Below, piece by piece: positions 221-2,238 of a DNA stretch of 64,000 bases; positions within the stretch are counted from its first letter, which is position 1, and each line of letters starts with the position of its first letter. The stretch is from assembly GCF_011386835.1 (NCBI RefSeq), contig NC_088809.1, positions 1,178,001-1,242,000 on the forward strand. Reading direction: 5' to 3'. Under the pieces are notes generated by a model. The model was not told the DNA's origin. It did no database searches and was given only the letters and a program-made list of their open reading frames with translations. Source of the DNA: Chrysemys picta bellii. Its lineage: Eukaryota. The translations under genes were made by a program, and so were the position numbers.

Positions 221-429
221 ATGGCAGAGCCCAGGCCCGTCCTTCAGGCCAGTCTTGGGTTACTTGTGGGCCACGGTCCCTGGGGCTGGGGCAGACGCAG
301 GCGCAGGCCCAGACCTGGCAGAACAGTCAAGCTCAGGGAGCCCCTCAGACGGGTGTTGCAGGAATTCCTGCTCTGGGCAGCGTCTCAGCCAACCGCAGGC
401 CCCCTCCAGCCCCTGGAGCTGCTGGCTGG
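221..429 (+). CDS. Putative novel gene exon 1 (or an internal exon starting at 248)
   Basis: MAEPRPV...PLELLA; donor TGG|gtgact, phase 2; in-frame acceptor ccttcag| at 247 also possible. Confidence 0.45.
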
Positions 430-2238
430 GTGACTTACCTGCCTGTCATTGTGGTGACCTCCCCTGCCCGAGTCCCACCTTGCCAGGTCTCCCCCCCCAA
501 GCTGTGGGGCTGCTGGCTCTTGCCTCGCCGGGCACCGTGGCTGGGATGGCATGTTGGGATGCCTGGGGCTGCCCCACTCCCACTCATCTCGTTTATGTTC
601 CAGGCACCTAGAGTCCCTCCCAGCCCTCAGCAGCTGGGGCCAGGCCCGACGTTCCCCCGAAGCTGCCCCCAGCTCCTGCAGCATCCAGGCCCTGCCCTGC
701 GCCCACCCTGCCCCCAGCGCAGCCCAGTGTGGCCACGTGAGTCTCCTCTTCCTGTCTGACTTGGCGCCCGAGGCCCTGGCCCCTGACGTGTCCTGCCGGC
801 CGTGACGCCCCAGGGGAGCTGCCGCCCCAGCGTCTGGGCTGGTTCGAATCTGGCTGAAAGCCGCTCCTTTGGGGCCCAGCTCAGCACAAAAGGCAGAGAA
901 CGGATGGGCCATGGAGCCTGGACGCCCGTCTCCCTTCCAGCGGGACACCTGCTCCAGCTTCCGCCCTGGCCCTGGCGCCCCCAGCCATGCACGGAGCTAA
1001 GCCCCAGCACACACGGCTGGACGCCTGCGCCACGTCCCCTCCCGTGCTCTCTTCCTCTTGCAGATACTGCCTCCTGTCCATGCCTGCCGCTGCCCTGCCA
1101 GCGCTCCCAGGCATGGGCCATCCCCTGCAAGGCTGGCTGGGAACAGGAAGTGGAAGCTTTCAGCCTAAGGGCTCTACTTGTCCTTCCAGCTGCCGCCATG
1201 GGAGGTGCTCACTGCCCAGAGTGGTTCCAGGTTCCAGGGGGCCAGCCAGGGCAGCCCATGGGAGGACCCGGCTCAGCCCTGGCCCCAGAGCCAGCAGCGC
1301 CCTGTGGCTCCCTGGTTACTCCATGGGAAAAGGTGAGAGTCACCAGCCTGGGGCCAGGAGTGAGTCTGGCCGTGGGGCTGTGCAGGCAGGAGCACAGGCC
1401 CCCAGGACAGGGCTCAGGGCACATCAGAAGGTGACCCAGGGATGGGGGGCAGGCAGTGGGGTGGGGCAGCCATGGCCAGATTTGATGTGGGCCCCAGGCT
1501 CACTGCACATGCAGCCTCTGGCAGGTTAGTGGCCTCCTGTGCTCCTCTGGGCCACCAGCCCTGGCCCCAGTACTCAGCCCAGCCCTTGCTTGCGCTGCAG
1601 GAGCCTGGGCCGAAGGAAGAGCTCCGTTGGCTCGTGTCTGCTCCTGAGAGACACCCAGCAGCAGGGCCCTGAGCCTCCCCCCGGCCTGGAGGGGCAGGTC
1701 GCGCCGTCAGCCCCTCCCCTGCCAGGGCAGCCAGGCAGCAGCACAGGGCGCCAAGGTAAGTAGTGATGGAGCAGCAGCTGCCAAGGTTTCCCTATTGCAG
1801 CTCCGCCCACGCAGGCTGGAGGGGTCAGAACTGGGGTGTCCCTGGCTCCCCGGGGGGGGCCTCGACTGGGCAGATACTGTGAGCCTGGGATGGGAGAAGC
1901 CTTTCCCAGCATGCTTTGCACAAGAGAGACTAAGGGAGATGTGGGGCAGAGGCTCCCTGGAAGTCGTGTCTTCATGGAGCTGAATCAGTGGGGGGGAGCG
2001 GGAGCTCCTTAGCTCTGGGGCCCATCCCAGAATCGGGACCCTTCCCCCAGCTCTGGTTCCCTGATACCCCCTTGCAGCTAGAGGGGAGGAGGGTGGGGCC
2101 CAGGGTGGGGCTGGCACTAATTGCTCCTGTCCCTTGCGGCCAGCAGCAGGCGCTGACCCTGAGCTGCGGCTGGAGGAGGTGCTGGACTCGCTGCAGGAGC
2201 AGCTCCAATCCTACAGCCTGTGGGACGCCCGGGACTGA
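221..2238 (+). CDS. Putative unannotated 5-exon protein-coding gene, join(221..429,604..736,1190..1332,1601..1755,2144..2238), 244 aa
   Basis: Four GT-AG introns with matching phases (2,0,2,1); 735 nt stop-free; ggacATGG Kozak; last exon ADPELRLEEVLDSLQEQLQSYSLWDARD* has strongly GC3-biased codons. Protein not recognised; 5' end uncertain. Confidence 0.55.
604..736 (+). CDS. Putative novel gene exon 2
   Basis: Acceptor ctcgtttatgttccag|, donor CAC|gtgagt; HLESLPALSSW...QCGH; phase 2 to 0. Confidence 0.5.
1190..1332 (+). CDS. Putative novel gene exon 3 (alternative upstream acceptor at 1063 adds an in-frame TAA)
   Basis: Acceptor ctctacttgtccttccag| with branch-like cctaag upstream; donor AAG|gtgaga; LPPWEVLT...LLHGK; phase 0 to 2. 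Confidence 0.5.
1601..1755 (+). CDS. Putative novel gene exon 4
   Basis: Acceptor cccttgcttgcgctgcag|, perfect donor AAG|gtaagt; SLGRRKSSVGSCLL...GRQ; phase 2 to 1. Confidence 0.55.
2144..2238 (+). CDS. Putative novel gene terminal coding exon
   Basis: Acceptor gctcctgtcccttgcggccag| (NAGNAG cagcagcag); AGADPELRLEEVLDSLQEQLQSYSLWDARD, TGA at 2236-2238. Confidence 0.55.

What the first reader, a model, noticed from the sequence alone, without database searches (positions are those of the whole stretch)
221..2238. Unrecognised 5-exon protein-coding gene immediately downstream of VTN
Seen: exons 221-429, 604-736, 1190-1332, 1601-1755, 2144-2238 have pyrimidine-rich AG acceptors and GT donors (one perfect AAG|gtaagt). 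Every junction is phase-compatible, giving a stop-free 244-aa ORF that ends in a codon-biased helix-like segment ELRLEEVLDSLQEQLQSYSLWDARD*. None of the exons appears as a full ORF in the six-frame track. Knowledge: in human the gene next to the VTN 3' end is SEBOX (minus strand), about 2 kb away, and I recall no plus-strand coding gene there. Inference: a reptile-retained or lineage-specific gene, possibly lost in mammals. GC-rich DNA makes open frames easy, and I chose among alternative splice sites, so this is a hypothesis.
Basis: partly seen in the sequence, partly recalled or inferred. Interest (0 to 1): 0.85.

Follow-up and report, generated by a model that had tools for sequence, protein, structure and literature searches.

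The report
Last four exons of KIF12
The supposed new five-exon gene next to VTN is mostly the already annotated tail end of the kinesin gene KIF12, whose earlier exons lie upstream of the window; the proposed first exon and start codon look like intron sequence, so this is ordinary.

Summary
The arithmetic holds: the five segments join into a stop-free 244-aa ORF. It is not an unrecognised gene.

- **Exons 2-5 are real.** Segments 604-736, 1190-1332, 1601-1755 and 2144-2238 are the last four coding exons of KIF12. Their 174-aa product is 98.9% identical to residues 320-492, the C-terminus with the same stop, of NCBI's KIF12 of Chrysemys picta bellii (XP_042703150.1).
- **The locus agrees.** In Emydura, Macrochelys, Gopherus, Malaclemys and swan, a KIF12 gene with an N-terminal kinesin motor sits convergent with VTN. 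Where the locus extends far enough, SEBOX lies beyond it.
- **The window is truncated.** It starts inside a KIF12 intron. The preceding exon lies about 1.2 kb upstream of base 1.
- **Conservation fits coding exons.** Splice sites of exons 2-5 are conserved in Malaclemys, Gopherus and Emydura. Exonic indels there are multiples of three, unlike the introns.
- **Exon 1 is unsupported.** Segment 221-429 with its ATG appears in none of the 243 proteins fetched. It loses the ATG outside emydids and carries a 1-nt indel or stops in other turtles.
- **No read evidence.** The only read-laying run failed.

Verdict: already known, low interest.

The parts
1..603 (+). 3' part of the KIF12 intron that precedes the 'HLES' exon. 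The window begins inside this intron.
   Evidence: Window base 2 aligns to Malaclemys L006:9896. The preceding coding exon (..LLQEFVLENEQHR) is at L006:8568-8699, about 1.2 kb upstream of the window start.
1..173 (.). G-rich minisatellite (periods about 38 and 55-56) inside that intron.
   Evidence: Tandem Repeats Finder. The orthologous Macrochelys intron translates as a much longer repeat array.
221..429 (+). Most likely intronic and not coding.
   Evidence: No 8-mer of its peptide occurs in any of the 243 proteins fetched, which include 7 Malaclemys KIF12 isoforms. The ATG is present only in the emydids; it reads CTT in Gopherus and AAG in Macrochelys. Gopherus has a 1-nt indel, Macrochelys and Emydura have in-frame stops, and Emydura barely aligns (49% identity). 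Identity to Malaclemys is 95.9%, the same as the flanking intron at 96.0%.
604..736 (+). It encodes HLESLPALSSWGQ...AAQCGH.
   Evidence: tblastn of XP_042703150.1 (P0243) residues 319-364 lands on 602-739, with only the final residue, which runs past the donor into the intron, differing. The acceptor ttccag| and donor |gtgagtc are conserved in Malaclemys, Gopherus, Macrochelys and Emydura.
1064..1165 (+). It matches the terminal exon of Malaclemys KIF12 isoform X6. Sea-turtle and Macrochelys KIF12 proteins carry a related cassette at this point.
   Evidence: P0238 residues 607-640 match window 1064-1165 at 100%. Chelonia P0116 and Macrochelys P0124 carry the related cassette 'TLAPVH.CRCP...'.
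1190..1332 (+).
   Evidence: P0243 residues 364-411 land on 1190-1333 at 97.9%, the one difference being G in the window against D in the protein. The donor AAG|gtgagagt is identical in all five turtles. Other turtles have 12 extra nt at the acceptor.
1601..1755 (+). It holds the conserved (V/A)PSAPP(L/W)P motif.
   Evidence: It matches the P0243 tail. The donor AAG|gtaag is conserved in Malaclemys, Gopherus and Emydura. The motif is also in chicken and alligator KIF12.
2144..2238 (+). Three tandem acceptors give starts at 2144, 2147 and 2150.
Evidence: P0243 residues 463-492 land on 2146-2235 at 100%. The sequence is ccag|CAG|CAG|GCG.
2469..2474 (-). VTN polyadenylation signal (AATAAA on the minus strand).
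   Evidence: Pattern search.
2555..2652 (-). Last VTN coding exon, ending ...YPRPIAQYWLGCP*, with its stop at 2555-2557.
   Evidence: Translations. VTN identity comes: 100% to a Chrysemys picta bellii protein, with the other hits named vitronectin.

Best explanation
Window 604-2238 (+) carries the last four coding exons of KIF12. KIF12 is a kinesin with an N-terminal motor, and in turtles and birds its gene lies tail to tail with VTN. The four exons encode the C-terminal, proline-rich, low-complexity tail of the protein, about 174 aa.

The motor, neck and coiled-coil exons lie upstream of the window, which starts inside a KIF12 intron. It happens to be open in GC-rich DNA and to end at a GT.

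Shown here:
- identity of the exons with the annotated KIF12 of the same species;
- synteny with VTN in five other species;
- conserved splice sites and frame-preserving indels.

Inferred only: that the tail works like the mammalian KIF12 C-terminal domain. There a proline-rich domain speeds the turnover of ACC1 and PC (PMC11914266).
For: - **Same-species match.** The exon 2-5 peptide is 98.9% identical over 174 aa to residues 320-492, the C-terminus and same stop, of XP_042703150.1 KIF12 [Chrysemys picta bellii]. It is 98.9% identical to Malaclemys X1 and 97.1% to Trachemys KIF12.
- **Synteny.** In Macrochelys, Emydura, swan, Gopherus and Malaclemys, a gene whose product hits Pfam Kinesin lies convergent with VTN. 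Where the locus reaches further, homeobox (SEBOX), Vma12 (TMEM199) and POLDIP2-type genes follow. NCBI names these products KIF12.
- **Spacing.** The gap between the KIF12 and VTN coding regions is 317 nt in Malaclemys (L006:12125 to 12443) and 316 nt in the window (2238 to 2555).
- **Motor position.** The motor motifs (GQTGSGKT, SSRSH, DLAGSE) sit at the 5' end of the gene in swan, Emydura and Macrochelys. The 3' end is therefore tail.
- **Conservation.** All acceptors and donors of exons 2-5 are conserved from emydids to the pleurodire Emydura. Exonic indels are 6, 9, 24 nt (Gopherus) and 6, 12, 24, 9 nt (Emydura), while intronic indels take any length.
- **Deeper homology.** The tail aligns collinearly to the C-terminus of chicken KIF12 (E 1e-10) and to alligator KIF12 (E 8e-5). 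Both share the QVVPSAPPWP motif.
Against: - No read-level RNA evidence was obtained. The only read-laying run was consumed by a filter error. The run shares are uninformative, because the runs are not on record as RNA and also hold VTN introns.
- Purifying selection on the tail is weak. dN/dS is 0.59 against Gopherus and 0.64 against Emydura, barely below the off-frame values of 0.66-0.85.
- The Macrochelys orthologue shows lost acceptors, a 1-nt indel and a stop in this tail.
- There is one residue difference (G against D) from XP_042703150.1.
- The annotated proteins are themselves computational models.
- The motor exons of this genome's copy are outside the window and were not seen.
Confidence: 0.95

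Rival explanations
1. An emydid-specific alternative first exon (221-429) inside the KIF12 intron would give a motorless, tail-only 244-aa KIF12 isoform.
For: The ATG, the open frame and the GT donor are all present in the window and in Malaclemys. The 12-nt difference between them is in frame. Motorless KIF12 variants are reported for human (PMC11914266).
Against: None of the seven Malaclemys isoforms, nor the C. picta or Trachemys models, contains it. Identity to Malaclemys equals that of the flanking intron. The ATG is absent in Gopherus and Macrochelys, with a frameshift or stops elsewhere. A 69-codon open frame has chance p of about 0.2 here. There is no evidence of a transcription start.
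Confidence: 0.03
2. An independent, previously unrecognised lineage-specific gene, unrelated to any known family and lost in mammals.
Against: Exons 2-5 are contiguous with KIF12 motor and stalk exons in the annotated proteins of the same species and of more than 20 other turtles and archosaurs. Mammals keep KIF12 elsewhere (PMC4546649).
Confidence: 0.01
3. There are no coding exons at all. The whole ORF would be a chance product of GC-rich DNA, and the annotated KIF12 tails would be gene-prediction artefacts copied between turtle annotations.
For: Long open frames occur in all six frames. The peptide is low-complexity and rich in P, G, A, S and W. dN/dS is about 0.6, close to the off-frame values. 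A single-sequence search of 1.84 billion representatives finds the tail only in turtles and alligator.
Against: Splice sites are conserved and indels preserve the frame across the cryptodire-pleurodire split, while the introns take indels of any length. Chicken and alligator KIF12 C-termini are collinear and share a motif. The stop position relative to VTN is the same in Malaclemys.
Confidence: 0.01

Closest known systems
KIF12 of Chrysemys picta bellii, XP_042703150.1 (492-aa NCBI model)
   Same: Residues 320-492 equal the product of window exons 604-736, 1190-1332, 1601-1755 and 2147-2238. The stop codon and the C-terminal SLWDARD are the same.
   Different: One residue differs (D in the model, G in the window, in AQS[G/D]SRF).
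KIF12 isoforms X1-X7 of Malaclemys terrapin pileata (XP_053864335-342)
   Same: The DNA is 96% identical over window 2-2600. KIF12 and VTN are convergent with the same spacing.
   Different: Full-length models of 629-736 aa with an N-terminal motor. The isoforms show exon-3 skipping (X7), an alternative terminal exon matching window 1064-1165 (X6), and tandem-acceptor variants (X2-X4).
Mammalian KIF12 (kinesin-12 family; mouse and human)
   Same: The architecture matches: N-terminal motor, stalk, and a C-terminal non-motor region containing a proline-rich domain (PMC11914266). NCBI gives the sauropsid gene the same name.
   Different: The gene sits elsewhere. Mouse Kif12 lies in a chromosome 4 interval (PMC4546649), not next to Vtn. 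No mammalian protein came up at E <= 0.001 with the turtle tail as a single-sequence query. Tail homology to mammals is therefore untested beyond my own recollection of a similar SAPPLP motif.

Membership tests
KIF12 (terminal exons of the gene) | Encoded peptide matches the C-terminus of the KIF12 protein annotated in the same or sister species | tested here: met
   98.9% over 174 aa to C. picta XP_042703150.1 and to Malaclemys X1, ending at the same stop. Exon-by-exon tblastn agrees.
KIF12 (terminal exons of the gene) | Same genomic position as KIF12 in related genomes (convergent with VTN, between VTN and SEBOX) | tested here: met
   Loci L001, L002, L004, L005 and L006. Window 1-2600 aligns collinearly to the 3' end of those genes.
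KIF12 (terminal exons of the gene) | Kinesin motor domain (PF00225) encoded upstream in the same gene | not testable with these tools
   The window starts in an intron about 1.2 kb after the preceding exon, so this genome's motor exons are outside it. Orthologous genes carry PF00225 and the P-loop, switch I and switch II motifs at their 5' ends. The C. picta protein model joins motor and tail.
KIF12 (terminal exons of the gene) | Conserved splice sites and reading frame of the exons | tested here: met
   Acceptors and donors are conserved in Malaclemys, Gopherus and Emydura. Exonic indels are multiples of 3. Macrochelys is the exception.
KIF12 (terminal exons of the gene) | Spliced mRNA containing these junctions | not tested
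The shares from the look-up of sequencing runs cannot show splicing.
   The ATG exists only in emydids. Other turtles carry a 1-nt indel or in-frame stops. No annotated protein contains the peptide.

The most novel reading that the evidence does not exclude
Segment 221-429 could be an emydid-specific alternative first exon, giving a motorless tail-only KIF12 isoform of 244 aa. That would parallel the motorless KIF12 variants described in human.
Probability: 0.03. Interest if true: 0.25.

Novelty: already known. Interest (0 to 1): 0.06.

Why it matters
It matters little biologically. The exons belong to a gene already annotated in this species.

The case is useful as calibration. A tool-less reader found four true exon pairs of splice sites in GC-rich DNA where open frames carry no information. 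It could not name the gene because the window cuts off the recognisable motor domain, and because KIF12 sits at a different locus in mammals.

Two minor points may interest annotators:
- The KIF12 tail evolves almost neutrally in turtles, with dN/dS about 0.6, and looks disrupted in Macrochelys.
- One Terrapene model containing this tail is labelled 'uncharacterized protein'.

Tried and rejected
1. **Read laying on window 1-6000.** So there is no junction, strand or depth evidence.

2. **The look-up of sequencing runs, used twice.** No holder is on record as RNA. The best 'RNA?' runs hold 61-78% of the words of 150-2650 and 91-94% of a VTN stretch that includes introns. They cannot separate spliced RNA from DNA or pre-mRNA. 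Inconclusive.

3. **My first reading,** that the whole ORF is a chance product of GC-rich DNA (statement). Rejected for exons 2-5 once the orthologous loci and the annotated proteins were seen. Kept for exon 1.

4. **A kinesin-14 guess,** from the Pfam Microtub_bd hit. Rejected because the motor motifs are at the 5' end of the gene.

5. **Exon 1 as the cassette exon REPILLTSSQALAREGQRALAQELAR of Gopherus and Platysternon.** Rejected. That exon is at L005:13739-13819, upstream of the part that aligns with the window, where window 27 equals L005:14325.

6. **dN/dS as a discriminator.** The true frame is only marginally lower than the off-frames, so it decides nothing.

7. **The search of earlier findings.** Nothing by place or by words.

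8. **The promoter/terminator scan** is bacterial in type and irrelevant here.

9. **Two VTN isoform look-ups** were not on record. The Carettochelys locus shows no called kinesin and aligns only patchily.

Full report
**Observation**

The first begins at an ATG, and the others have AG acceptors behind pyrimidine-rich stretches. All non-terminal segments have GT donors. Together they form a 735-nt ORF of 244 codons ending ...ELRLEEVLDSLQEQLQSYSLWDARD*.

That alone proves little:
- Window 1-2450 is about 67% G+C.
- The chance of a stop is 0.022 per codon.
- All six frames hold only 10-19 stops in 816 codons.
- Open stretches of 31-69 codons arise by chance with p = 0.2-0.5.

My own first reading was a chance ORF.

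**Surroundings**

VTN lies on the minus strand.
- Its last coding exon is 2555-2652 (...YPRPIAQYWLGCP*), and a minus-strand AATAAA sits at 2469-2474.
- A VTN exon from the window is 100% identical to a Chrysemys picta bellii protein. It is 80-92% identical to the vitronectins of other turtles.

The finding therefore lies just beyond the 3' end of VTN, on the opposite strand. The two are convergent.

**What lies there in relatives**

I used the turtle and bird vitronectins to fetch their loci.
- In Macrochelys (L001), Emydura (L002) and swan (L004), the next gene after VTN is on the opposite strand. Its product of 619-682 aa hits Pfam Kinesin.
- In Emydura a homeobox gene (SEBOX) follows it. 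In swan a homeobox gene, Vma12 (TMEM199) and a POLDIP2-type gene follow.
- Window 1-2600 aligns collinearly with the 3' end of that kinesin gene.
- The P-loop, switch I and switch II motifs sit at the 5' end of the gene. The motor is therefore N-terminal, and the end next to VTN is tail.
- A protein search with a motor exon returned NCBI's name for it: kinesin-like protein KIF12. That name recurs in more than 20 turtles and many birds.

A second search with the tail, followed by a cluster look-up, brought in the emydid proteins. These include XP_042703150.1 KIF12 [Chrysemys picta bellii], Trachemys XP_034608861.1 and seven Malaclemys isoforms.

The peptide of reader exons 2-5 (174 aa) compares as follows:

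| KIF12 protein | Identity | Region matched |
|---|---|---|
| C. picta | 98.9% | residues 320-492, its C-terminus and same stop |
| Malaclemys X1 | 98.9% | C-terminus |
| Trachemys | 97.1% | C-terminus |

The last acceptor is a triple tandem, ccag|CAG|CAG|GCG. C. picta's model uses 2147, and Malaclemys X3 uses 2150.

The KIF12-to-VTN spacing between coding regions is 316 nt in the window and 317 nt in Malaclemys.

**Where the rest of the gene is**

In Malaclemys the preceding exon (..LLQEFVLENEQHR) is at L006:8568-8699, and window base 2 corresponds to L006:9896. The window therefore starts about 1.2 kb into that intron. No earlier KIF12 residue matches the window.

**Exon 1**

Segment 221-429 lies in that intron, and nothing supports it as coding:
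- None of the 243 fetched proteins shares even an 8-mer with its peptide.
- The ATG is present only in the window and Malaclemys. It reads CTT in Gopherus and AAG in Macrochelys.
- Gopherus has a 1-nt indel. Macrochelys and Emydura have in-frame stops. Emydura barely aligns, at 49% identity.
- Its identity to Malaclemys (95.9%) equals that of the adjoining intron (96.0%).

I had suspected it matched the cassette exon REPILL...QELAR of Gopherus and Platysternon. That exon lies further upstream, outside the window.

**Conservation of exons 2-5**

- All acceptors and donors are conserved in Malaclemys, Gopherus and the pleurodire Emydura.
- Exonic indels are 6, 9, 24 nt (Gopherus) and 6, 12, 24, 9 nt (Emydura). 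Intronic indels take any length.
- Constraint on the amino acids is weak. dN/dS is 0.59 (Gopherus) and 0.64 (Emydura), against 0.66-0.85 in the wrong frames.
- Macrochelys has a 13-nt deletion at the exon-4 acceptor, GG in place of AG at the last acceptor, a 1-nt indel and a stop. This matches its divergent annotated C-terminus.
- The tail aligns collinearly with the C-terminus of chicken KIF12 (E 1e-10).
- In an exhaustive search of 1.84 billion representatives it found only turtle proteins and alligator KIF12 (E 8e-5). Chicken and alligator share the QVVPSAPPWP motif. No mammalian protein came up at E <= 0.001.

**Mechanism**

Shown: these are the terminal coding exons of KIF12.

Inferred from the family: the protein is a microtubule motor with an N-terminal head. 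This segment is its non-motor, proline-rich C-terminal tail.

In mouse and human the C-terminal non-motor region holds a proline-rich domain. [quoted passage not shown] Mouse Kif12 is also a cilium-associated candidate modifier of polycystic kidney disease, on chromosome 4 (PMC4546649).

Whether the turtle tail does the same is untested. Its sequence is not detectably similar to mammalian tails in my search.

**RNA evidence**

None could be obtained. The run shares cannot tell spliced RNA from DNA.

**Verdict**

The interpretation as an unrecognised gene is wrong. This is the annotated KIF12, cut off by the window edge. It is already known and of low interest.

Noticed in passing
window 1-173; L001:17650-18450: A G-rich minisatellite (periods about 38 and 55-56) sits in the KIF12 intron at the window start. 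The orthologous Macrochelys intron translates as a much longer related repeat array.
   Followed up: partly
It matches the terminal 34 residues of Malaclemys KIF12 isoform X6 at 100%. Sea-turtle and Macrochelys KIF12 proteins carry a related cassette at the same point.
   Followed up: partly
window 2140-2152 (+): Triple tandem acceptor ccag|CAG|CAG|GCG at the last KIF12 exon. All three choices appear in annotated emydid isoforms, which differ by one alanine each.
   Followed up: yes
L001:15400-16700 (Macrochelys suwanniensis): The KIF12 tail looks disrupted in Macrochelys. There is a 13-nt deletion over the exon-4 acceptor, AG changed to GG at the last acceptor, a 1-nt indel and an in-frame stop, with dN/dS 1.19. 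This could be real decay or an assembly error.
   Followed up: partly
window 2239-2557: The KIF12 and VTN stop codons are only 316 nt apart and convergent. VTN's AATAAA is at 2469-2474. No AATAAA or ATTAAA lies on the plus strand between 2239 and 3200, so the two 3' UTRs may overlap.
   Followed up: partly
P0244 (XP_026512395.1, Terrapene carolina triunguis): A 268-aa model named 'uncharacterized protein LOC113407619' joins an N-terminal piece of the KIF12 motor directly to this tail. It looks like a fragmentary KIF12 model rather than a separate gene.
   Followed up: partly
L005:13739-13819 (Gopherus flavomarginatus): A 27-residue coiled-coil cassette exon (RREPILLTSSQALAREGQRALAQELAR) is present in the Gopherus flavomarginatus and Platysternon KIF12 models. 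It is absent from the emydid models. It would lie upstream of the window.
   Followed up: no
L002, L004, L005, L006 (whole loci): Across these turtle and swan loci the gene order reads SARM1 - VTN - KIF12 - SEBOX-like homeobox - TMEM199 - POLDIP2. In mammals KIF12 is elsewhere (mouse chromosome 4), so the gene has a different neighbourhood in the two lineages.
   Followed up: partly
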